Positions 423 to 20,350 of a DNA stretch of 64,000 nt are shown here, piece after piece; positions within the stretch are counted from its first letter, which is position 1, and the number at the start of each line of letters is the position of its first letter. A program made the position numbers and the translations under genes. The notes beneath the pieces were generated by a model. The model made no database searches. It was given only the letters and a program-made list of their open reading frames with translations, and was not told the DNA's origin. This DNA is from Lama guanicoe. Lineage: Eukaryota. The stretch covers positions 4,453,902-4,517,901 of the forward strand of contig MU053652.1 of assembly GCA_013239625.1 (NCBI GenBank), written 5' to 3'.

Positions 423-3400
423 CTGTAAGGCAGACACAGTTATGTGGGGGACCTCAGTTTCTCCTACCTCAACCCCCTTGCTGTCCCAGGCCCCCACTCC
501 TGTGTGGTTGTGCCTCCACCCCAGAGGTCCGGCACCAGGTGACAACCTGGAGCATCAGGACAAACCCCAAGCTGGGAGACAGAAGGCGTAAGTCTGAGTT
601 CCAGCTCTGCTCACATTGCTGTGTGATCCTGGGTAGCTCACACCCCCTTTCTGGGCCCCAGCTTTCATCTCAGACACAAGGAGCTGGGCCTGAATGCAGG
701 TGTCCTCCCTTTGACTCCTCAGGGCCCCAGGGCAGTACCTGTGAGCTCCCCTTTCTGCACGGTGAAGGGGATGACCAGGTTGAAGGGTCTCAGCATGGAC
801 TCCATTGGCTCCACAGGCACCACTGGCTCCTCGGTGGCCTGTGGCAGGTGAGAGGGGACAGTCACTGGCTGGAGAAGGCCTGGGAGCTTGGCCTGAGCCA
901 TGACTGAAGGCAGAGAAAATGAGGAAAGAACAAGATGGTTAATGTTGAAACTGGAAAGCAGGAGAGGCGCATCTGCTGCAGGAGAAGTGCTGTGCCCAGC
1001 TCGGGGGTCTGTCTCCCCAGCCTGACTCCCGCCTGCTCCCCAAGACGGCCCCCAAACCATGCCCCAGCCCTGGCTGCTGAAGAAGAGAAGGAAGAAGTGG
1101 AGGGAGAGGAGGAGGAGGGCGAGGTCTGGCCCAGGTGGGAGGTGGCAGTACCCAGTGTGTGGGGTAGGCGCTGGGCCGGTGCAGCTGCAGCACATCAGAG
1201 GGTTCCTCCACGTGGGGCATGGGGTCACACGCCTGGGAGGCAAGGCACGGAGAGCACAGGATGTGGCAGGCCAGTATTCACCAGCTCTAGTGACCAGGAG
1301 CTGACTCAGAATGGCCCAGGGACCCGAAATCCTGGGTTGCCCATGGGGCAGGATGGGTATCTTGGGTGCTTTACCCTCTGGAGGGCTTCATTGTCCTGCA
1401 GGGCCACCTTGGAGAGCTGTACAGGAACAGTGGGCTCAAGGGTCAGAGAGGAATATGGCAAATTCCACCAGAGAGGGCTGACCGACTGCCAGAGGGGCCA
1501 GAGGCAGGGCTGTGCTCACCTCCCAGGTTGGGAGGCTACTGGGAAAGCAAAGGCTCAACTCTGGAGCACTCTGGGACCAGAAGCCATCAGACATGGCGAC
1601 AGGTCCTGGATTCCTTGCTATTGCTAGTAAGGCTGGCCCCCCCACCTCCTCCAGCCACCATCTAGTCCTGCTGCGGCCGCGGAGCTTACCAGCACGTGGA
1701 AGGGGCTGTTGGGGATGTGCTCGCCTCCGAAGCGGATGGTGATGACGTACTTGCCCGGCTCAGGTGCAGTGTAGTAGATGTCGAAGGTACCATCGTGGTT
1801 CTCAACCACATCCACGTCGAGCTCTGCCCCATCCGGGGTGGACACTGTGCACGTCACCTTCCCCTTGCCTGCTGCCTTGGCGTCCACTGTGATCACTGTC
1901 TCCTCCCCAATCTGGATGCGGGGGCCCAGGCAGGCACCTGCCACACAGAAGCAACCGGTCATGGGTTCTGTAGGGGCCCTAGGCCCAGCCCCACTCAGTT
2001 CCCAACTGCCTCCACCACCTCAGCCCACAGCAAGAAGAGAAGGGGCACTCACCCAGGCCGTGACCTCCAATGGACACTGGAAACAGAGAAGAATGTGAGA
2101 CCATGAAACACTCAGGAGAGGGTGGGGGGCAAGGGATGGGTAAGGGCAGGGGAGGTGGGAGAGGGGACTGGGGCAGGGGAGGCGGAGTGGGTGCCCACCT
2201 GTGACGAGGCACTTGCTGGCGTCCCCAGTGGGCAGGGCATGGATGCGGAAGGGCGAGTAGGGGATCTCGTCACCACCGTACTTGATGGTGATGGTGTACC
2301 GGCCACTCATGTCTGGCAGATAGGACACGGTGTATGTGCCATCCCCGTTGTCTCGGATGTTGGCCTTCTTGGGCTTACCCTCGGGGTCCTGGGGGAGAAG
2401 CAGAGGTCAAGGCCGGTCTGTGCCCAGAGCCTGACCAGGGAGGTGGGCAGCACATGGACTTACCAGGATCTGGACAGTGAGCAAGCCCTCCCCAGCATCC
2501 CGGGCATCGATGGTGAACTCCACAGGCAGGCTGGCAGGGATGCCAGCGGCATTGAGGCCGGGGCCACTGGCCCGCACCTTGCTGGCATCATGGGCTGGAA
2601 GCACCTTAATCTTGAAGGGGCTTGAGGGGTAAAAGGATAGTTAGTTGGCTGAGGGTCGGGGGGAGGCAGAGTCTTGTCTCATTTTGGGCCTGGAGTCCTT
2701 CCCACATTCATGAGAAGGGGAGATGACTCCTGAGTAGGGAGGAGGGACCAGGTCACAGCCTGAGTCATGCGGGAGGGTCATTCGGGTGTGCCCCCAACCG
2801 AAGCCTGAGCATTTCTTCTCCATTCTCCAGGCAGATGCTGTGGTTTGTTTAAAGTGGAGGGTGCAGGAGGCTGCCCTCTCCCACCTGTTTGCAGCTACAT
2901 GGTCGGGGGAAAGCCCAGCCAGAGGAGGGTCCCTGAGGCTGTGCTGCCTCCAGGTTGGAAAAGACAGGCAGGGGGCCCTGAGAAAGAGTGGGAGGGGGCA
3001 GCAGAGACCAGATGAAGCCAAGACAAGTGGGAGGAGTGTTCCCAGGGCCCCACAGTGGCCCTGCAGGTGTGGCCTTGGTAGGAGCTCCCCAGAGCTCAGC
3101 ACAGCACAGGAGCCCAAAGCTGGTCCTCACCTGCGTGGCACCTCCTGGTCAGCATACTTGACGGCTACTGTGTAGGGCCCATCAGTGGCTGGGGTGTAGT
3201 GGACAGTGTGGGTGCCATCTCCATTGTCACGCACCTCCACAGGCTCAGCCACACCTGGGCAAGGGAGCAGGGTCAGCAAAGCCTCCTGGCACCCTGTCCC
3301 ATCTCTCTCCGCCCTGCCCATACATTCTCATACCTGTGGGGCCCAGCACGGCCACCTGCAGGGGGGCCCGGCCAGCTTGGCTGCAGTCTACCGTGAAGGT

Positions 3401-9400: not shown

Positions 9401-12400
9401 GCATAGAGCTTCAGGTCTCCCTTGCCAGCTGCACGGGCATCAATGGTGAACTCTGCTGGCTTGTCCACGATGCAGCCAGTGGGCTCCAGGCCAGGCCCAA
9501 AGGCCTTCACCTGTGCAGGAGCAAGAGAAGAGGGCTGGGTTGGGTACTGGAGGAGAGCCATTCACCTTGTCCCGGGCCCACGGGCAGAAGCGGGGACCAC
9601 ACCTTGTCTGGGAAGCAGTCGGGTGGCGCTGGCTGGATGTGAGCAATGAAGGGTGAGTCACGGATGTCCTCATCGTCGCAGATGACATGCACAGCGTACT
9701 CCCCTGGCTCTGTGGGCCAGTACCGCACATCGCAGGAGCCATCTCCCTTGTCATCACACTCAATCTTGGCCTGCGAAGGCCCCTCAATGGAGAAGCCTAG
9801 GTGTGAGGTGGGGAGGGTTAGAGGGCACAAGAGGCAATTTGGACCCTCAGGCAGGTCCCCCATCACTCCCCTCCCCAGCATCACCACCCTGGTCACCCCT
9901 ATGTCCCATCTCCCCATCTCATCTCAGACTCGCCAGAATTCCTGCCTCCTGTTCCCCAGTCACTTCCCAGTGTCCCTCCATCACACCACTCCTCAGCACG
10001 CCCACCTGCTGCCATCCAGCCACTTACCCAGTGTTCCCACCTCGGTGCCAATGGCCTCCACCACAAAGTCAGCTGATTTTCCCACCTGGCCAGTTTCCAA
10101 ACCGGGACCCCAGGCCCGTACCTTCTGCACTCCTGCCTCTGGGCTCACCTGTACCTCAAAGGGGCTGAGGAAAGAGGGAGCTGGTGTCAATGCTGGGCGG
10201 TGCCCCCATCAGAGGTACTCCTCCTCCCTTCCCTCAGAGTCCCAGGCAGTCCGCCTCCCTCCTCCCACCCTATGAGGGCCCAAACAGGAAGGCACAGGGG
10301 TTGCATGGTGCTTACCTGCGGGGAATCGCATAGCCGCCCCACGTGATGGTCACCACGTACTTCCCGGGCACCACGGGGTAGTACTCACACTCGAACACAC
10401 CATCCCCAGCCTCCCGCACCTTCACTGGCTCCTCTGTGCCCTCTGAGGAGATGTGGGGAGTAGGGGTATCAATGGCCTGTGAGTCCCAGCTCCTCGATCC
10501 CCTTGGGATCCAGAACCCTGGGGACCCAGGCCCAGCCTGAGGGCAGTGTTGCTAGTAGGCAGTGCTGAAAGTCCAGGCAGGGACCACGCGTCATCCCCAT
10601 GCATAACACCCTGGGGTAGCCATAGGGCAGAGAGCAACATTTACAGCTTGCAGACAGTGAGACCGAGGCAGATATAAGACAATGTGCACTTTGTGTCTCT
10701 TTTAGAGCCCCAACAGGGGTACGTGGTGCTGGCTGTCACTGCCCTCAGGGAGTTAAACCACTGGCCGAATCTTCTCCCTGCACCCTGACCCTCACTGGCC
10801 CTGGGCCCTGCCACTCACTTGGTCCTTTGACTGTGACCTTGAGTTCCCCGCTGCCAGCACCCTTGGTGAACACCTTGAAGTCAGCCACCTCTTTGACACG
10901 TACACCCTTGGGCTGCAGGCCCCGCCCAGAGGCACGGCAGGCATTGGGGTTACAGGCTGGGAGGAAGAGAAGAGGCGGGGTTGGGGGCACTGAGGGGCCC
11001 TAGACAGATCCTCAGCCTCCCACCATTTGTCCCCCACCTCCCTGTGCACAGTCCTCCCGACACCCACAGGCACAGGCCATGGCCTCATGCAACCCTCCCC
11101 TGGGCTCCCTGGTGCCCCGGACACCACTGGGAGCCATGCTAGGCAGGGAGCCGGCCACAGCGCCCCTAGCCCCCCTCATCAGGCTGGTTATAAGAAACCC
11201 TTCCCGCTGGGCTTCTCAGAGTCAGTGTCGCCTGGGACAAAGGCATAGCAGAGCCTGGGCAGAGACTTGAGCAGAGACACAGGGAAGGGCGCCTTACCCA
11301 CCCCAAGGCCATCCACCTAGAACCATCTGAGCCTTCTCAGAGCTACCACAGCAGCTTTGGGAATGACATGCCACAAAACACTCAGCAACATCATGGAATG
11401 AGAGGTATTCATATAACAAGAAGCCTGCCACAGATCACAGGCAATTCATATAAAAGTCAGCCTGCCACAGAACACTGCCAGTGGCAATGAACCCAGACTT
11501 TGCTACTGAACACAGGCCAAAGAACAGTGATCTCAACCTGCCACGGAACAGATAAAATGGCATGGAACTTAAGGGTGCCACCAAACAGGCAATGACATAT
11601 AATCCAGGCCTGCCACAGAACAGACAATGGCACGGAACTGAGATCTTCATCACAGAACTCATCAGGCAAGTGGCAAGAAACGAGATCTGCCACAGAACAT
11701 AAGCAAAGGCATGGAACCTGGGGCCTGTCACAGAATGCCACGGAAGGGGGCGACTCCACACCGCTCGGGCCATGCCACACAGCACAGGTGAGGCCAGTCA
11801 GCTATGGCCATGCCTGGCCCCGCCTCCGCTGGCGTGTACTAACGTGGTGCCACTCTCCTGGCCTGGTGGACGATGGGCACAGAGGGGGCGAGAGGCGGCA
11901 AGGGCTCTGAGTGGTAGAGAGAGAACCGAGTGGGGGGAGTCACCACCTGAGGGCCTGCCCTACAGGGGCTCACCGTCCCTTTTCCCTCGCCCTTTCATGG
12001 TGGCGCCTGTCTGGTATCCTTCTCTGAGGCCTCCTGACCCTTCTCAGGGACGGGATGGACAGATGATCTCTCAAGAGCCCCACCCCTTGGCTCTTCCTTC
12101 TGCCCATTTTAAGCCTTCAGATGGCTCCCCTCAACCAACCCCTGGATTTAGTGCTTCATTTCCCATGAATCCTCAGACTCAGAATTTGGTGGAAATGCTC
12201 TCTGCGTCCTGGCCTCAGCGAGGGAGATGGTAAGGATGGGTGAAGGGCCTTTACCTTCTGCCACATGGACGGGGAAAGGACTGCGGGTGATGGGGGCACC
12301 AGCGAAGGCCACATGCACCGTGTGGGGCCCCTCCATCACAGGCCTGTATGTGCAGCGGAACGTGCTGTCGCCTTTGTCCTCCAGGGCCACCTCCACTGTG

Positions 12401-15400
12401 TCCCGCCGGCCCTGCGGGTCCACGATCACCACAGCAACATCACCAGTGCCAGCCCCTGTCACGACAATGGCGATTAGCCCCCATTCTGGACATGCACAGA
12501 TGCTCAGGGATCCCTCCCCCAAGACCACCCCTCTCTGGCTGGGACCCTGCCCCAGTCCCCCACGCACACCCTCCCCATGCTGTGAGGGGCTGCCCGCCTG
12601 AAACCTCCTAGGACCCTTCCTCACCTGCTGTGTAGATGTCAAAGTAGGTGGGTTTGTTGGCCACGTTGCCCACAGGCTCCAGGCCAGGACCACGGGCTGA
12701 CACCTTGTTGGCATCCCCCAGGGCCATGCCCACATTCACCTCAAAGGGGCTGCGTTCGATGTTCTGGCCAGCAAAGAGCACGGTCACCTGGGGGTCAAGG
12801 GCCAGAGATTAGCTAGAGGAGAGGAGCTAGAGGAGAGCAGCTCTGAGAGGGGGTGGAGGAGCAGAGCAGAGCCAAGGTGGGTGGGAGGTGGGTGGCCGGT
12901 GCACGGCCAGGATGTGAATGGAATGGGGAGGTCAGGGGAGGTCCTGCAGGGAGATACCTTGTGCAAGCCGGCGACCTTGGGCACATAGGAGACAGCGTAG
13001 GTGCGGTTCTTGTCATTGTTGGGAACCACTTTGGCCTATTGGGAACGGAAAAGACTGGCAATCACAGTGGCTGTAGCCCCTCCTGACCCCACAGCACCTG
13101 GAGGCCCAAACGGTAAGCACCCCGCCCCTGTCCCCAGCACAGTGGGTGACTCCAGCAGCCATCACCAGGCCAATGCTATTGTTGGCCTGTGGACTCTTGT
13201 CCCATCCCACGCTAATCCCCCTCGTCCCAGAGGCCTCTCCATACCTCCTCAGTGTGGCCCTCGGGATCCTCGATGTAGACCAGCACCTCGCCCACACCAG
13301 CATCCACCGTCTGCACGGTGAAGTGTGCGGGCTGCAGCACAGTGTTGCCCTGGGGCTCGATGCCTGAGGGACAGAAAGTGGAGACAGATAACTTAGGGAG
13401 ATCCTTCCAAGCCTGTGCCCAGCTGTCTGGGGCGGACTGCCAGGGGCTCAGCACATACCAGGCCCATAGGCAATGGCCTTCTTGGGGTTCAGCTGCTTGG
13501 AGCGAACAGGGGCACCAGGTTTGAGTTTGGCCTTGGGGAACTGGGACAGGTAGGTCATGACAGAATGCTCATCCACATTGGGGTCCACAATCTCCTCGGG
13601 GGCAATCACCTGCCACAGGGAGGAAGGGAGTTACAAGGTGCCCTCCTTACCCAGCAACCTCGGTTCTCCCCACATCCTGACCGGATATCCCTACAGACCC
13701 AACTCCATCCTTGGCCCTCTGGCCCCTAGACTCTCCCACTGCCTGATCCGTCAGCGTACCTGGGGCACCCCGAGCCAGTCGTCCGCCTGCTGCATGGCCT
13801 CCCGGGCGTTCTCCACAGGCTGGTTGGGGTCCCAGGCCTCCCAGTCAGGGCAGAGGCCTGGAGAGATGGCAGAGGGAGGCAATGATTAGGGGAAAGTGGT
13901 CAGCCAGAATACAGAGCATTTGCTGGCCCAAGACCGTCACAGGCTGTGAGTTCACGCTCCCTCCCACACAGCTCTGGGGCCCTGACCAGCCAGGTTTCTG
14001 CTGACCCTCTATGCTGTAGCCCATCAGCTGGGATGCCCATCGCTGTTTAGAGGAACGGCAGCCCTCCCGAGCACCAACAATGAGGCCTTTCTGTCCCAGC
14101 TGACGCAGCCTGGCACCAGCCCTGCCAGCCAGCCTCCTGCCTGCCCAGGCCCCAGCACTGATCCTGAACACCACACCCCTATAAGGGCACCCCTGGCAGA
14201 TCTCTCCTGCCTCATTCCAGCTGCCTCTGGGGTGGGCAGTCCCTGTCCGGCACAAGTCCCTGACCCATCTCCTGGAAGGTCTTCTCCCAGCTGCCCTGAA
14301 GCCCTAGATCTCCAAGCATTTCGCACATCAGCCTTGGGGCATGACTCTCTCTCCTTCCTAACTGCCCATTTGGGGAAACAAAGGCATTGAAGGGCCTATT
14401 GGGAGAGGATGGGTTCTTCTTTCTGGTCACCCAGAACCCAGCCCTTCTAATGGGAGGAATGCTGAGGTCACTCCTGGGAAGGCTTAATGCTAGGTTACTG
14501 GGTACTTGGTCCAAGCCAGAGCTGGAGAGGAGGGCAATGCTTACTGGTGGGGAGTGGACCAGCTCAAAGGCTGGAATCCATGACTGGCCAGAACAGCTGA
14601 GCTCACTGCTGGCAGTCGCATCAGCGTGGGCAATGGCTCAGCAGCTGGGAATGCTTCCCAGGCAGCCGGACGGTGCCCCCGCCTCCCACCCCCTGCTCCC
14701 GGGCTGACCCCAGGCTGGGGGAGGATTCCCCCAAGGGGCCATGGCTCCCTAGAGGCAGAGGGGAAGAGAAGACCTATCTTCCCAGGAGAGGAGGGTCAGA
14801 AAGGGAGTAACACATGGGGTAGGGCTCTAGTCCGTGATGCTTGTCTTCTTGTGGGCCCTGAGCTGCCCCCACCTGACTAGGCCGGGGCCTACACTGACTG
14901 AGGGTAGGGCTGGGTCACCTGCCACTGGGCAGGGTCACACCAGCCTCAGCCCACATCATCCTGGGTCTCATCCCCTTCTCAAAGCTGTCCTAGGGTCTCA
15001 TAAAGAGGAGCCTCTGTGGGTCTAAGTCCTGGCCTTCTTTCTACAAGTCCCACTGCATTTCCTCTCTCCCGGCTGAGCAGAAATGGCATCCTTATAGCAA
15101 ACTAGGAAGTTCACAGAGCAGGGAGTCGAGGTCTTGGGCTCTGGTTCAGTGCAGCCTCAGATAAGCTGTGTGATCTTGGACAAGTCACAGGCCTTCTCCA
15201 GACCTCAGTGACCTTGTCTGTAAAATCTTCTGCTATTGCAGGAATTGGCAACTCATCAGGGAGGGCCTAACTCTGGCAGTGGTTCCCAGCTGGACCAGGG
15301 GGTCCTGATCCCCCAGCCCTGAGACACTCATTCTGACAAACATAAGCCTCGGCACCACCAGTTCAGCTCAGCTCTCCCTCCAGGGTCAGGGGTCCATGGA

Positions 15401-18400: not shown

Positions 18401-20350
18401 AGAGGTGTGCTCAGGAAGGATGAGGCCTGGAGAGGGGCTGGGCGCCCCCGCAGCAGGGAGGAGAGGGGAAGGCTGAGCCATTTCCTATAAAGTCTCTGTG
18501 AGGCCCCAGGCCCTCCCCTTGAGACCCCATATGGGACAGTCAATCCTGTCGGTCAAATCTCAGCTGCTGAGGGATGAAGGCCCCAGGGATAACTCCTCTC
18601 TGACCCCCCCCCAAACCACACCCGCTCTCAAGCAGCCCTCAGCCCCACTACACACACCAGGGCCCCCTCCCCCACCCCCTGTCCTCAGGCTTGTCCTTCT
18701 GGAAAGCTCAGAGACATCTGCTGTGTCACGGAGGCAGGGCTATTTCCAGGCCAGAGCGGGTTGGGGGGGGCAGTTTTGGGGCAGGAGGGGGTAAGGCCTA
18801 GAGAGGGGACTGGACAGGGCAAAGGGCCCCAGACTGACCTCAGCAGCTAATTCAGGAGGCCTAGAGATACCCTAAGGGAGAGTGGGGTTGGACAGACATT
18901 CAATTATCTGAAGAAGTCTCTGGGGCATCCTGGTGGGGCACCTGACCCCCTGTGAAACTCCCTTCCAGGGGCCCCGGAGTGCATCTACGCTCCCCCTCAC
19001 CACGCTCTTTCTTGCAAATCATAGCAGGGCTCTTAAGAGCTCACCACAGGGGTAGGGGGTCTTCCCCCACCCTCCAGCCTGCGGGGATGACTGCAGGCCT
19101 GTGAGGGGAGTGCCAGCCCCTCTCCTCTCAGAGTCCACCCTAGGCTCCCCAGCTCCCAAGCCTAAAGTGCCTCCCCACCCCCACCCAGCACTGACACACC
19201 TTCCAAATCTGGTTACACTCAATGACTTCCTCCCTTCTCTAGGCCTTCCCTCCCTCCTCTCAGCCCAGACCATTAGCTGCAGCCAATCCGGGTTTAGAAG
19301 GTGGGCTGAGGCCGGGCATGGACAGGAGGGAGCCCCCTCCCCCGCTGGCTGAAGCCGGTAGAGGACAGGCAGGGGTTAAGGCTCCCTGCGCTCGCTCAGG
19401 ACCTTTTTAGGTTTCCGAAGCTGGGCTCTACAGGCTCTGGCCCCTGGGCCTGAACCCAGCTGCCGAGGACATGCCTGCGGGGGCCCCAGGCCCCGCGCCC
19501 GCCCGGTCACCAGCTCTCCCCTGAGCCCTGTGATCGGGCAGTGGTTGGGACCTGCCTTCTGCTCCTCCTTCCCGTTGGAAGTGCCGGGAGGCTGGGAAGC
19601 CATTTGCTTTGTTTGGGGGGAGGTGCCCCCAGGAATCAATAATAGGCATTGGCCCTGTCCTCTCAAACAAGGGCTGGGGTTGCGGATGGCGGGAAAGGGG
19701 AAGATGAGTAGAGGCGGGTTGGTGGGAGTGTGCGGGGGAGACTGAAGCTGGAGGATTAAGAAACGGACTGGTCTGGACTCTCCCGGACCTCTTTGGGATG
19801 CCGGCCGTCCAGAGGGGTGTGAAGGCAGAGCCCGAGGGGTCTGCATCGGCAGGCGAGAGCCGGGCTGGGGTTCTCTCCCGGTGCCGTGGCGCTCTCTGCC
19901 CTTTCGGCTTCCCGCGCGCCCACCCAACACCTGAGTCCCCTGTCCCCATGGGTCAGCCCCGCCGCGGAGCACTACCCCTCCACACCCGCACTGACCGATG
20001 GACACGAGCTTGATGTGCTCGCGCTCAAGGAACTCGAGGGCCACAGACACATTCTCCAGCTTCATCTGGCGGAAGTTGGGGCGCGGGTGAAACTTGCGGT
20101 ACATGCGCTTCTGGCTGAGGACCTCGAGCAGCGCGATGAGGCGCAGCCCGTCGCTGAGGTCGCGCTGTAGGTCGGTCAGGCGCTTGCCCACGCACTTGAG
20201 GTGCTCGTTGCACCACCGCGTGAAAGTGTTCTGTTGGATCTTCTTCCATGGCGCGTCCTCCGCCAGGTCCTTCTCCGTGGACGGCATGTCGTCCGCTTCG
20301 TCGCCCAGACCGAGGCCCGGGGCCTCGGAGTAGCCGCTGTTGTTCATCAT
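282..20350 (-). CDS. FLNC: Filamin-C, coding exons 1-33 (gene continues beyond window start): actin-binding CH1/CH2 domains, Ig-like repeats 1-15, hinge 1, most of repeat 16
   Basis: Spliced translation [53 protein letters not shown]... matches filamin C; 33 exons with GT-AG ends and consistent phases; synteny with CCDC136/OPN1SW. Confidence 0.99.
739..838 (-). CDS. FLNC: FLNC exon 32, 100 nt
   Basis: [33 protein letters not shown]. Confidence 0.96.
1152..1232 (-). CDS. FLNC: FLNC exon 31 (hinge 1, alternatively spliced), 81 nt
   Basis: [27 protein letters not shown]; phase 0-0. Confidence 0.9.
1690..1937 (-). CDS. FLNC: FLNC exon 30, 248 nt
   Basis: [14 protein letters not shown]...NSPFHVL. 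Confidence 0.96.
2053..2076 (-). CDS. FLNC: FLNC exon 29, 24-nt microexon
   Basis: VSIGGHGL; ttccAG acceptor, G|GTGAGT donor, phase 1-1. Confidence 0.92.
2199..2388 (-). CDS. FLNC: FLNC exon 28, 190 nt
   Basis: [17 protein letters not shown]...SKCLVT. Confidence 0.96.
2464..2620 (-). CDS. FLNC: FLNC exon 27, 157 nt (AAG acceptor)
   Basis: [19 protein letters not shown]...LTVQIL; acceptor cccctcAAG. Confidence 0.95.
3131..3254 (-). CDS. FLNC: FLNC exon 26, 124 nt
   Basis: [14 protein letters not shown]...DQEVPR. Confidence 0.96.
3334..3501 (-). CDS. FLNC: FLNC exon 25, 168 nt
   Basis: [16 protein letters not shown]...VLGPT. Confidence 0.96.
4234..4394 (-). CDS. FLNC: FLNC exon 24, 161 nt
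   Basis: [18 protein letters not shown]...GGRPIP. Confidence 0.96.
4643..4805 (-). CDS. FLNC: FLNC exon 23, 163 nt
   Basis: [19 protein letters not shown]...RFTVET. Confidence 0.96.
4918..5091 (-). CDS. FLNC: FLNC exon 22, 174 nt
   Basis: [15 protein letters not shown]...YTAYEE. Confidence 0.96.
5788..6385 (-). CDS. FLNC: FLNC exon 21, 598 nt
   Basis: [14 protein letters not shown]...SGPGVEPH. Confidence 0.96.
6762..7024 (-). CDS. FLNC: FLNC exon 20, 263 nt
   Basis: [15 protein letters not shown]...PPDPSK. Confidence 0.96.
7117..7234 (-). CDS. FLNC: FLNC exon 19, 118 nt
   Basis: [19 protein letters not shown]...QGLNS. Confidence 0.96.
7446..7615 (-). CDS. FLNC: FLNC exon 18, 170 nt
   Basis: [16 protein letters not shown]...YTAVQQ. 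Confidence 0.96.
7705..7795 (-). CDS. FLNC: FLNC exon 17, 91 nt
   Basis: [30 protein letters not shown]. Confidence 0.96.
7972..8132 (-). CDS. FLNC: FLNC exon 16, 161 nt
   Basis: [15 protein letters not shown]...VLFANQ. Confidence 0.96.
8284..8407 (-). CDS. FLNC: FLNC exon 15, 124 nt
   Basis: [18 protein letters not shown]...SEAGQ. Confidence 0.96.
8636..8779 (-). CDS. FLNC: FLNC exon 14, 144 nt
   Basis: [17 protein letters not shown]...PKSPFR. Confidence 0.96.
9397..9510 (-). CDS. FLNC: FLNC exon 13, 114 nt
   Basis: [21 protein letters not shown]...LKLYAQ. Confidence 0.96.
9603..9796 (-). CDS. FLNC: FLNC exon 12, 194 nt
   Basis: [20 protein letters not shown]...CFPDK. Confidence 0.96.
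10028..10164 (-). CDS. FLNC: FLNC exon 11, 137 nt
   Basis: [22 protein letters not shown]...EVGTL. Confidence 0.96.
10316..10442 (-). CDS. FLNC: FLNC exon 10, 127 nt
   Basis: [22 protein letters not shown]...GGYAIPR. Confidence 0.96.
10819..10956 (-). CDS. FLNC: FLNC exon 9, 138 nt
   Basis: [17 protein letters not shown]...VTVKGP. Confidence 0.96.
11369..11777. repeat. Degenerate ~37-nt tandem array with internal inverted repeats in FLNC intron 8
   Basis: TGCCA-like anchors at 11426, 11463, 11501, 11539, 11576, 11611, 11648, 11688, 11726; consensus (+) CCTGCCACAGAACA-N~3-8-(T/A)GGCA(T/A)GGAAC. Confidence 0.85.
11844..11906 (-). CDS. FLNC: Putative alternative FLNC cassette exon 8a (63 nt, [21 protein letters not shown])
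   Basis: Acceptor ctcggttctctctctaccactcAG, donor C|GTTAGT, phase 1-1, length a multiple of 3, no stop in the FLNC frame. Confidence 0.7.
12255..12455 (-). CDS. FLNC: FLNC exon 8, 201 nt
   Basis: [16 protein letters not shown]...SPFPVHVAE; phase-1 donor G|GTAAAG. Confidence 0.96.
12625..12787 (-). CDS. FLNC: FLNC exon 7, 163 nt
   Basis: [17 protein letters not shown]...YFDIYTA. Confidence 0.96.
12958..13035 (-). CDS. FLNC: FLNC exon 6, 78 nt
   Basis: [26 protein letters not shown]. Confidence 0.96.
13245..13363 (-). CDS. FLNC: FLNC exon 5, 119 nt
   Basis: [15 protein letters not shown]...EGHTEE. Confidence 0.96.
13459..13609 (-). CDS. FLNC: FLNC exon 4, 151 nt
   Basis: [24 protein letters not shown]...AIAYGP. 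Confidence 0.96.
13760..13857 (-). CDS. FLNC: FLNC exon 3, 98 nt
   Basis: [33 protein letters not shown]. Confidence 0.96.
15420..15668 (-). CDS. FLNC: FLNC exon 2, 249 nt
   Basis: [18 protein letters not shown]...DNCAP; AG/GT ends. Confidence 0.97.
16025..16345 (-). mobile_element. Old L1 3' fragment (L1M-type)
   Basis: Resembles antisense L1 3' UTR (ttgacatacaacaaactgtacat...gaatcatacagtatgta); boundaries approximate. Confidence 0.6.

What the first reader, a model, noticed from the sequence alone, without database searches (positions are those of the whole stretch)
11844..11906. Frame-preserving 63-nt proline-rich cassette exon between FLNC Ig repeats 2 and 3
Seen: acceptor ctcggttctctctctaccactcAG (AG at 11908-11907), donor CAC|GTTAGT, and phase 1-1 matching exons 8 and 9. 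Inclusion turns ...HVAE-ACNP into ...[29 protein letters not shown]. It is not among the canonical FLNC exons as I recall them, though it may exist in predicted isoforms. Inference: an extra hinge-like linker with PxxP (SH3-type) motifs and a V-P-I (I/V-x-I/V, small-heat-shock-protein-binding-like) motif. That would be notable because FLNC is a client of the BAG3-HSPB8 pathway.
Basis: partly seen in the sequence, partly recalled or inferred. Interest (0 to 1): 0.75.

Follow-up and report, generated by a model that had tools for sequence, protein, structure and literature searches.

The report
Known optional FLNC exon 8a
This 63-base stretch is most likely this animal's copy of a little-known optional exon of the muscle protein filamin C, already reported in mouse, which adds a floppy proline-rich spacer between two of the protein's domains.

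Summary
On the minus strand, 11906-11844 is a 63-nt open stretch in phase 1-1, with an AG acceptor behind a good pyrimidine tract and a weak GTTAGT donor. It lies between the exon that ends filamin repeat 2 and the exon that starts repeat 3.

Sequence alone is not beyond chance: 9-15 equally good in-frame open AG..GT pairs occur per strand of this window.

The exon is already in print. Solovyeva et al. [quoted passage not shown] It is included at about 10% in normal muscle and under 1% in a myotonic-dystrophy model, was confirmed by a junction peptide, and is called conserved in mammals.

New here: partial filamin-C models of a shark, an eel, a bass and two snakes carry a 41-53-residue proline-rich insert at the same junction. 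Motifs from those inserts occur only once in the window's six-frame translation, in the open frame holding this exon. Profile scores are not significant.

The SH3 and small-heat-shock-protein ideas remain untested.

The parts
11844..11906 (-). Candidate FLNC exon 8a: 63 nt, phase 1-1, encoding (E)[20 protein letters not shown](P)
   Evidence: Read and translated. Best of 110 in-frame open candidates in intron 8. Same size and place as the published mouse exon 8a (PMC10770608).
11907..11930 (-). Acceptor AG with pyrimidine tract containing CTCTCT
   Evidence: Acceptor score 5.86 on a recalled weight matrix. CTCTCT occurs 2 times in the 348 nt upstream of the exon against 0.3 expected; 12 of 300 shuffles reach 2.
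11838..11843 (-). Weak donor GTTAGT (C at -1, T at +3), with an in-frame TAG at 11841-11839
   Evidence: Donor score 0.29 against 3.59 for the upstream exon's donor. The ORF ends …VAPR*.
11863..11880 (-). VPIVHQ: the only match in the window to [IV]-x-I-[IV]-x-Q, the core shared by the shark, bass and snake inserts
   Evidence: 1 hit in 108,754 residues of six-frame open segments. The strict form with P at the fifth place has 0 hits.
11907..11994 (-). 29 open codons upstream of the acceptor in the exon's frame, holding [13 protein letters not shown] (11932-11970). Possible intronised 5' half of an older, longer exon.
   Evidence: Open segment 11994-11842. The patterns PQ.{2,3}TPP and SP.{3,4}PQ.{2,3}TPP each have 1 hit in 108,754 residues, both here. 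The profile alignment covers it at 5.5 bits, which is not significant.
12255..12455 (-). FLNC exon 8 (second half of Ig repeat 2)
   Evidence: Pfam Filamin profile positions 40-92 of 93, E 5.7e-14.
10819..10956 (-). FLNC exon 9 (start of Ig repeat 3).
11360..11790 (-). Degenerate 37/76-nt repeat array starting about 50 nt downstream of the donor, with core …TGTTCTGTGGCAGG…
   Evidence: the repeat finder families D1-D5 with spacings of 37 and 72-77. GTGGCA 9 against 0.4 expected, 0 of 300 shuffles. TGTGGCAG 16 in the window against 4.4 expected, four of them here. TRF did not report it.

Best explanation
This is the copy, in this non-primate mammal, of the published mouse Flnc 'exon 8a'. It is a minor, regulated, frame-preserving cassette exon between FLNC exons 8 and 9.

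Its weak donor keeps basal inclusion low. From the mouse data, inclusion is a feature of healthy adult skeletal muscle and is lost when muscleblind-type splicing control fails. That regulation is inferred, not shown here.

When included, the exon replaces the one-residue junction between Ig repeats 2 and 3 with a 21-residue proline-rich, probably disordered spacer, close to the actin-binding head.

It is probably the surviving 3' part of a longer (about 41-53 residue) FLNC-specific optional exon that still exists in gene models of a shark, teleosts and snakes.
For: Shown in this window:
- Anatomy, frame and position at the repeat 2/3 boundary.
- FLNC identity.
- Rank 1 of 110 in-frame candidates in the intron.
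- Weak donor.

Shown in print for mouse (PMC10770608, passages read):
- A 63-nt exon 8a lies between exons 8 and 9.
- Its abundance is about 10% of exons 8/9 in wild type and under 1% in the HSA-LR myotonic-dystrophy model.
- A peptide across its 3' junction was detected by targeted mass spectrometry in wild type only.
- In the window, the last trypsin site of the exon leaves three residues before the junction. That makes a short 3'-junction peptide and a very long 5' one, in line with the authors targeting only the 3' junction (inference).

Shown from databases:
- 14 partial filamin-C-like models reach the end of repeat 2.
- 5 of them continue into a proline-rich insert: shark P0049 (43 residues, both junctions, same phase), eel P0009 (both junctions), bass P0062, and snakes P0001 and P0002.
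- 7 of them join directly, and 2 read through the donor.
- 0 of 14 filamin-A/B-like or unclear models has such an insert.
- The shark, bass and snake inserts align well with one another.

Link to the window:
- The open frame 11994-11842 is the best intron-8 segment against the insert profile, and ranks 21st or 17th of 2,529 six-frame segments.
- It alone in the window holds [IV].I[IV].Q and PQ.{2,3}TPP.

Spacer: in an AlphaFold2 model of the shark partial, the insert has pLDDT 41-49 and no secondary structure, while the flanking Ig domains are near 90.
Against:
- The RNA runs that hold 24-40% of the sampled words of 10800-12500 hold more than the two flanking exons could give (about 17%). That excess could be intron as well as exon 8a.
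- I could not see the mouse exon's sequence, because supplements are closed and no mouse DNA is at hand. Orthology therefore rests on size, place and frame.
- Sequence alone is within chance expectation.
- Similarity to the fish and reptile inserts is not significant by standard measures. Smith-Waterman against shuffled tails: 208 of 2,000 and 474 of 2,000 shuffles reach the observed score. Profile E-values are 8.8 with composition correction and 0.06 without.
- The two unique motifs were each relaxed by one position after I had seen the window, so their rarity overstates the case.
- The two motif matches imply two different alignments, which cannot both be the direct one.
- YGCY (muscleblind-type) motifs downstream are no more frequent than dinucleotide content predicts: 14 against 14.4.
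- The partial models are automatic predictions of uneven quality. The 5' side of the eel insert is irregular.
Confidence: 0.7

Rival explanations
1. It is spliced in at a low level but has no function of its own. It would be a decaying relic or splicing noise that the cell tolerates because it keeps the frame. Its loss in the dystrophy model would be a by-product of general splicing change.
For: - Low inclusion in mouse, about 10%.
- Weak donor.
- The paper reports a shorter version in primates.
- Birds, a frog and two teleost models join repeats 2 and 3 directly.
- The mammalian exon lacks the best-conserved …PPKP[RK][RK]P tail of the fish and reptile inserts.
Against: - The paper calls the exon highly conserved in mammals, and its peptide is detectable.
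- An insert at the same junction in shark, teleosts and snakes with a shared core argues for long-term retention of something.
Confidence: 0.3
2. It is a chance pseudo-exon in this genome, neither spliced here nor the counterpart of the mouse exon.
For: 9-15 equally good in-frame open AG..GT pairs occur per strand of 64 kb. There is no read evidence here.
Against: - Exactly 63 nt, in the same intron and in frame, as in mouse.
- Best candidate in the intron.
- The only window matches to two motifs taken from the fish and reptile inserts fall in its open frame.
Confidence: 0.1
3. Its main role is to lower FLNC output, as a poison-exon switch like FLNA exonN. This would work through longer, stop-containing variants that use the same acceptor with downstream donors in or near the repeat array.
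For: - The same acceptor paired with a donor after 11762 gives a 145-nt stretch that is closed in all frames. Its donor score of 1.22 is better than the 63-nt form's 0.29.
- A TAG overlaps the 63-nt donor.
- A pyrimidine tract with CTCTCT resembles PTBP-repressed exons (the PTBP link is recalled knowledge).
Against: - The 63-nt form keeps the frame, and its protein product was detected in mouse.
- No longer form is mentioned in the passages I read.
- I could not establish from any text held which FLNA intron carries exonN. Zhang et al. 2016 is not held.
Confidence: 0.07

Closest known systems
Mouse Flnc exon 8a (Solovyeva et al. 2023, Mol Cell Proteomics, PMC10770608)
   Same: 63 nt, between exons 8 and 9, frame-preserving and absent from reference annotation. 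The paper states conservation in mammals.
   Different: Inclusion and translation were shown in mouse only. Here there is only the genomic sequence, and the mouse exon's letters could not be compared because supplements are closed.
Proline-rich insert after repeat 2 in partial filamin-C-like models of a shark (P0049), eel (P0009), bass (P0062) and two snakes (P0001, P0002)
   Same: Same junction. Same phase in the shark, where both junction codons are visible. Proline-rich, FLNC-specific and optional: 7 other FLNC-like models lack it. It shares the [IV]-x-I-[IV]-x-Q core and a basic end before the junction proline.
   Different: It is 41-53 residues instead of 21. It carries TPP[AS]D and PPP.[PL]PKP[RK][RK]P, which the window's exon lacks. 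In the window, an SP….PQ..TPP match lies upstream of the acceptor, in the intron. Similarity is not statistically significant by profile or Smith-Waterman.
FLNC hinge-1 exon (exon 31), the well-known optional FLNC exon
   Same: An in-frame optional exon that encodes a flexible, proline-rich inter-domain segment of the same protein.
   Different: It lies between repeats 15 and 16, is commonly included and is annotated. In the window the hinge-1 coding stretch is seen near 1190-1280. The exon number is from recalled knowledge.
FLNA exonN, the neuronal poison exon repressed by PTBP1 and promoted by RBFOX
   Same: An unannotated-type optional exon in a filamin paralogue, with a pyrimidine-rich upstream tract.
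   Different: ExonN is 58 nt by the mouse coordinates, and brings in a stop that leads to mRNA decay. The 63-nt FLNC exon keeps the frame. Whether the two lie in paralogous introns could not be established.

Membership tests
Counterpart of mouse Flnc exon 8a | Lies in the intron between exons 8 and 9 of FLNC | tested here: met
   Exon numbering follows the count of coding exons read and the paper's wording.
Counterpart of mouse Flnc exon 8a | 63 nt, frame-preserving | tested here: met
   The paper states 63 nucleotides.
Counterpart of mouse Flnc exon 8a | Sequence aligns to the mouse exon | not testable with these tools
   The paper's main text gives only mm10 coordinates. Supplements are closed and no vertebrate genome collection is on hand.
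Counterpart of mouse Flnc exon 8a | Spliced into muscle mRNA | not testable with these tools
The run listing cannot separate exon from intron.
Ancient FLNC repeat 2/3 proline-rich cassette (shark, teleost and snake models) | Insert exactly between the end of repeat 2 and the start of repeat 3, phase 1-1 | tested here: met
   The shark P0049 insert of 43 residues is flanked by …NISE and C.P..CRA.G. In the window the position and phase are the same.
Ancient FLNC repeat 2/3 proline-rich cassette (shark, teleost and snake models) | Significant sequence similarity to the insert profile | tested here: inconclusive
   Rank 21 of 2,529 (E 8.8, 4.0 bits) with composition correction, and 17 of 2,529 (E 0.06) without. 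First among the intron-8 sense segments. Shuffle tests gave 208 of 2,000 and 474 of 2,000.
Ancient FLNC repeat 2/3 proline-rich cassette (shark, teleost and snake models) | Shared core motifs | tested here: inconclusive
   [IV].I[IV].Q and PQ.{2,3}TPP each occur once in 108,754 residues, both in this open frame. Each pattern was relaxed by one position after seeing the window. The strict [IV].I[IV]PQ has 0 hits, and the PPKP[RK][RK]P tail is absent.
SH3-domain ligand (class I [RK]xxPxxP or class II PxxPx[RK]) | PxxP core | tested here: met
   PLPP, PLAP and PSVP in the translation.
SH3-domain ligand (class I [RK]xxPxxP or class II PxxPx[RK]) | Basic residue at the class I or class II spacing | tested here: not met
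   Read. No R or K lies three residues before, or two after, any of the three PxxP. The consensus forms are recalled knowledge. The shark, bass and eel inserts do hold PPKP[KR]R, which fits PxxPx[RK].
Small-heat-shock-protein docking motif (I/V-x-I/V) | [IV]-x-[IV] in an extended, unstructured segment | tested here: met
   V-P-I-V. This is weak on its own, since [IV]P[IV] occurs 55 times in the window's six-frame segments. The shark has I-P-I-V, the bass V-Q-I-V and the snakes I-Q-I-I.
Small-heat-shock-protein docking motif (I/V-x-I/V) | Binding to an alpha-crystallin domain groove | not testable with these tools
   This needs a binding assay.
Poison exon (FLNA exonN type) | Inclusion brings a premature stop or a frameshift | tested here: not met
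   The 63-nt form is open and divisible by three.

The most novel reading that the evidence does not exclude
The 63-nt exon is the surviving part of an FLNC-specific optional exon that dates back to the common ancestor of sharks and mammals. Its conserved [IV]-x-I-[IV] core, with a proline-rich basic flank, would be a splicing-gated docking site near the actin-binding head. Candidate partners are the groove of small heat-shock proteins, an SH3 domain, or a neighbouring filamin Ig domain by strand addition. Healthy adult muscle would then make a fraction of filamin C with different chaperone or partner handling, and would lose that fraction in myotonic dystrophy.
Probability: 0.12. Interest if true: 0.7.

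Novelty: already known. Interest (0 to 1): 0.38.

Why it matters
FLNC is a major cardiomyopathy and myofibrillar-myopathy gene, and its turnover depends on chaperone-assisted autophagy. An optional insert near the actin-binding end that is made in healthy muscle and lost in a myotonic-dystrophy model is still missing from reference annotation. Variants in it are therefore ignored in diagnostics, and its function is unknown.

This work adds a lead: a cassette at this junction is present in gene models from shark to snake. That would make it old rather than a rodent oddity, and it points to a short conserved core for binding tests.

For the scan itself, the lesson is that the finding is real in kind but not new.

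Tried and rejected
- **Reads.** The look-up of sequencing runs on 10800-12500 listed 24 runs.
- **Chance test.** The splice-site scoring uses recalled approximate frequencies, not a trained model.
- **Muscleblind motifs.** In the 500 nt downstream, YGCY occurs 14 times against 14.4 expected, and GCATG 3 times against 2.0 (99 of 300 shuffles reach 3). Neither is enriched. The region is only in the upper range of YGCY density along the gene strand (12-15 per 450 nt against a median of 8).
- **Repeat array.** TRF missed it. The repeat finder and motif counts show it. I did not work out its role.
- **Protein search reach.** Full-length FLNC isoforms (about 2,700 residues) are outside the length range of the search for homologous proteins, so annotated mammalian isoforms with the exon could not be looked for. 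The only two mammal-derived partials seen, from a tamarin, either stop short of this junction or read through the donor (P0004, P0064).
- **Homology tests.** Single-sequence Smith-Waterman and a five-sequence profile are not significant.
- **FLNA exonN paralogy.** The passages read do not name the intron. Zhang et al. 2016 is not held.
- **Papers.** The searches found only PMC10770608 for this exon. Many 'FLNC' hits mean 'full-length non-chimeric' reads. The 'exon 8a' belongs to ACTN2 and Clcn1.
- **Supplements.** Those of PMC10770608 (Fig. S3, Fig. S5, Table S3) would hold the peptide and the junction counts. They are closed.
- **Fillers without result.** The bacterial promoter/terminator scan is irrelevant for this genome. 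An RNA fold of 11780-11960 gave z = 0.55.
- **Errors.** One search failed because the word was in no finding. One search was a strand slip, corrected.
- **Spliced model.** The insert-bearing protein of this genome was therefore neither searched nor folded.
Full report
**What is there.** On the minus strand the window carries FLNC from its first coding exon (near 20350) down to about repeat 16 at the window's start. One downstream exon is 66 of 67 residues identical to human FLNC repeats 4-5 (PDB 3v8o, E 1.8e-45). The best FLNA chain scores less.

The exon ending at 12255 matches positions 40-92 of the 93-position Pfam Filamin repeat. The exon starting at 10956 matches positions 3-43. Two earlier repeat starts precede it. 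The 1,299-nt intron between them therefore sits exactly at the repeat 2 / repeat 3 boundary.

Inside that intron, 11906-11844 is 63 nt. It is preceded by ctcggttctctctctaccactcAG and followed by GTTAGT. It is open in the frame set by the upstream exon and returns to the frame of the downstream exon. An in-frame TAG overlaps the donor.

**Is it more than chance?** I scored splice sites with a simple weight matrix built from recalled, approximate mammalian frequencies.
- The acceptor is decent (5.86).
- The donor is poor (0.29; C at -1, T at +3).
- Across the window, 97 (minus strand) and 77 (plus strand) AG..GT pairs of 30-200 nt do at least as well on both sites.
- About 15 and 9 of them are divisible by three and open in one given frame, real exons included.

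A reader scanning all FLNC introns should meet one or more such stretches by chance. Within intron 8 this one is the best of 110 frame-preserving open candidates. That is suggestive and no more.

**The decisive test could not be run.** The look-up of sequencing runs on 10800-12500 found RNA runs holding 24-40% of the sampled words. I left those places out of all later searches. Nothing here shows splicing in this genome.

**It is already in print.** A full-text search led to Solovyeva et al. 2023, Mol Cell Proteomics (PMC10770608). I read its abstract, outline, section 24 (part 1 of 2) and the matching passages. The paper reports the following:
- It is present at about 10% of exon 8/9 abundance in wild type and under 1% in the HSA-LR myotonic-dystrophy model.
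- A targeted peptide across its 3' junction was detected in wild type only.
[quoted passage not shown] Same gene, same intron, same length, same frame-keeping: the window's stretch is very probably that exon in another non-primate mammal. I could not compare letters, because the peptide and junction plots are in closed supplements.

Further searches found no other paper on it. Earlier notes of this scan call the genome camelid-like. I did not test that.

**How it is probably controlled (inference).** The weak donor explains the low inclusion. Loss in the HSA-LR model suggests dependence on muscleblind-type factors or on adult-muscle maturity.

The sequence gives little direct support. YGCY motifs downstream are dense compared with the rest of the gene, but no denser than dinucleotide content predicts (14 against 14.4). 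GCATG is not enriched. CTCTCT sits in the acceptor tract (2 against 0.3 expected; 12 of 300 shuffles reach 2).

About 50 nt past the donor, a degenerate 37/76-nt repeat array begins. Its core is …TGTTCTGTGGCAGG…, with GTGGCA 9 times against 0.4 expected. Its role is open, and another note of this scan (s1-859701) concerns it.

**A deeper history (new here, from database models).** Full-length FLNC is beyond the length range of the protein search, so I looked for partial models that reach this junction (all three searches used).

Of the 65 proteins held, 28 contain the second half of repeat 2 (plus P0002, which starts inside it). Among the 14 that are filamin-C-like by name or junction sequence:
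- 5 continue from the end of repeat 2 into a proline-rich insert. These are a shark (P0049, 43 residues, then the normal start of repeat 3, same phase), an eel (P0009, insert then repeat 3), a bass (P0062) and two snakes (P0001, P0002).
- 7 join directly: four birds, a frog and two teleosts.
- 2 read through the donor.

None of the 14 filamin-A/B-like or unclear models has such an insert. The shark, bass and snake inserts align convincingly as …SP[VI]Q.I[IV]PQ…TPP[AS]D…PPP.[PL]PKP[RK][RK]P. The eel shares the last part.

**Is the mammalian exon a relative of that insert?** Standard statistics say not proven.
- Smith-Waterman scores of the snake tails against the window's open frame are reached by 208 of 2,000 and 474 of 2,000 shuffles.
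- A profile of the five inserts gives the open frame 11994-11842 only 4.0 bits (E 8.8) with composition correction, or 10.9 bits (E 0.06) without.
- That frame is nevertheless the best of the intron's sense-strand segments, and ranks 21st or 17th of 2,529 segments in the window.

Two short patterns taken from the inserts each occur exactly once in the 108,754 residues of the window's six-frame open segments. Both fall in this one open frame.
- [IV].I[IV].Q lies inside the exon, as VPIVHQ.
- PQ.{2,3}TPP lies 29 codons' worth upstream of the acceptor, within [13 protein letters not shown].

I relaxed each pattern by one position after seeing the window. The strict core has no hit, and the two matches suggest two different alignments. 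I therefore rate the relic reading at roughly 70%: the 63-nt exon as the 3' part of an older, longer exon whose 5' part is now intron.

**What the insert does.** An AlphaFold2 model of the shark partial (22-sequence alignment, mean pLDDT 79.4) gives confident Ig domains. The insert has pLDDT 41-49 and no secondary structure, which fits a flexible spacer.

By composition they should behave the same way.

- Three minimal PxxP exist, but none with the basic residue at class I or II spacing.
- V-P-I fits the loose I/V-x-I/V form. Alone it is weak (55 [IV]P[IV] in the window), but it is part of the one core shared with shark (IPIV), bass (VQIV) and snakes (IQII).

That makes a docking role worth testing. 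It does not show it.

**Verdict.** The interpretation as a real optional linker exon is supported by a published mouse study. The motif-based functions are untested, and the novelty is low because the exon is in print. What this work adds is a lead that the cassette is old and FLNC-specific, together with a short candidate core.

Noticed in passing
window 11360-11790 (minus strand): A degenerate tandem array with 37- and about 76-nt spacing starts about 50 nt after the exon-8a donor. GTGGCA occurs 9 times against 0.4 expected. Many units end in …tgtggcag, which looks like a 3' splice site. TRF does not report the array. TGGCA is also the NFI half-site (recalled).
   Followed up: partly
window 11762-11906 (minus strand): The same acceptor paired with a better-scoring donor after 11762 would give a 145-nt, stop-containing exon. 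This is only a weight-matrix candidate. It bears on the 'three-way switch' of note s1-859701.
   Followed up: no
proteins P0001, P0002, P0049, P0062 and P0009: The fish and reptile inserts carry a strongly conserved tail, PPP.[PL]PKP[RK][RK]P. In shark, bass and eel it fits PxxPx[RK]. They also carry a TPP[AS]D site. Neither is in the mammalian exon.
   Followed up: partly
proteins P0003, P0013, P0026 and P0064: Several automatic gene models end by reading through a donor into the intron (for example, after exon 8 in a tamarin and a molly, and after exon 9 in a gull). Short filamin 'proteins' in databases are often truncated artefacts.
   Followed up: no
window 51462-51601: A run of 140 N (assembly gap or masked stretch). 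I left it alone.
   Followed up: no
window about 1190-1280 (minus strand): The coding stretch of the FLNC hinge-1 optional exon (…[26 protein letters not shown]…) is present. It looks a few residues shorter than I recall for human. I did not check this.
   Followed up: no
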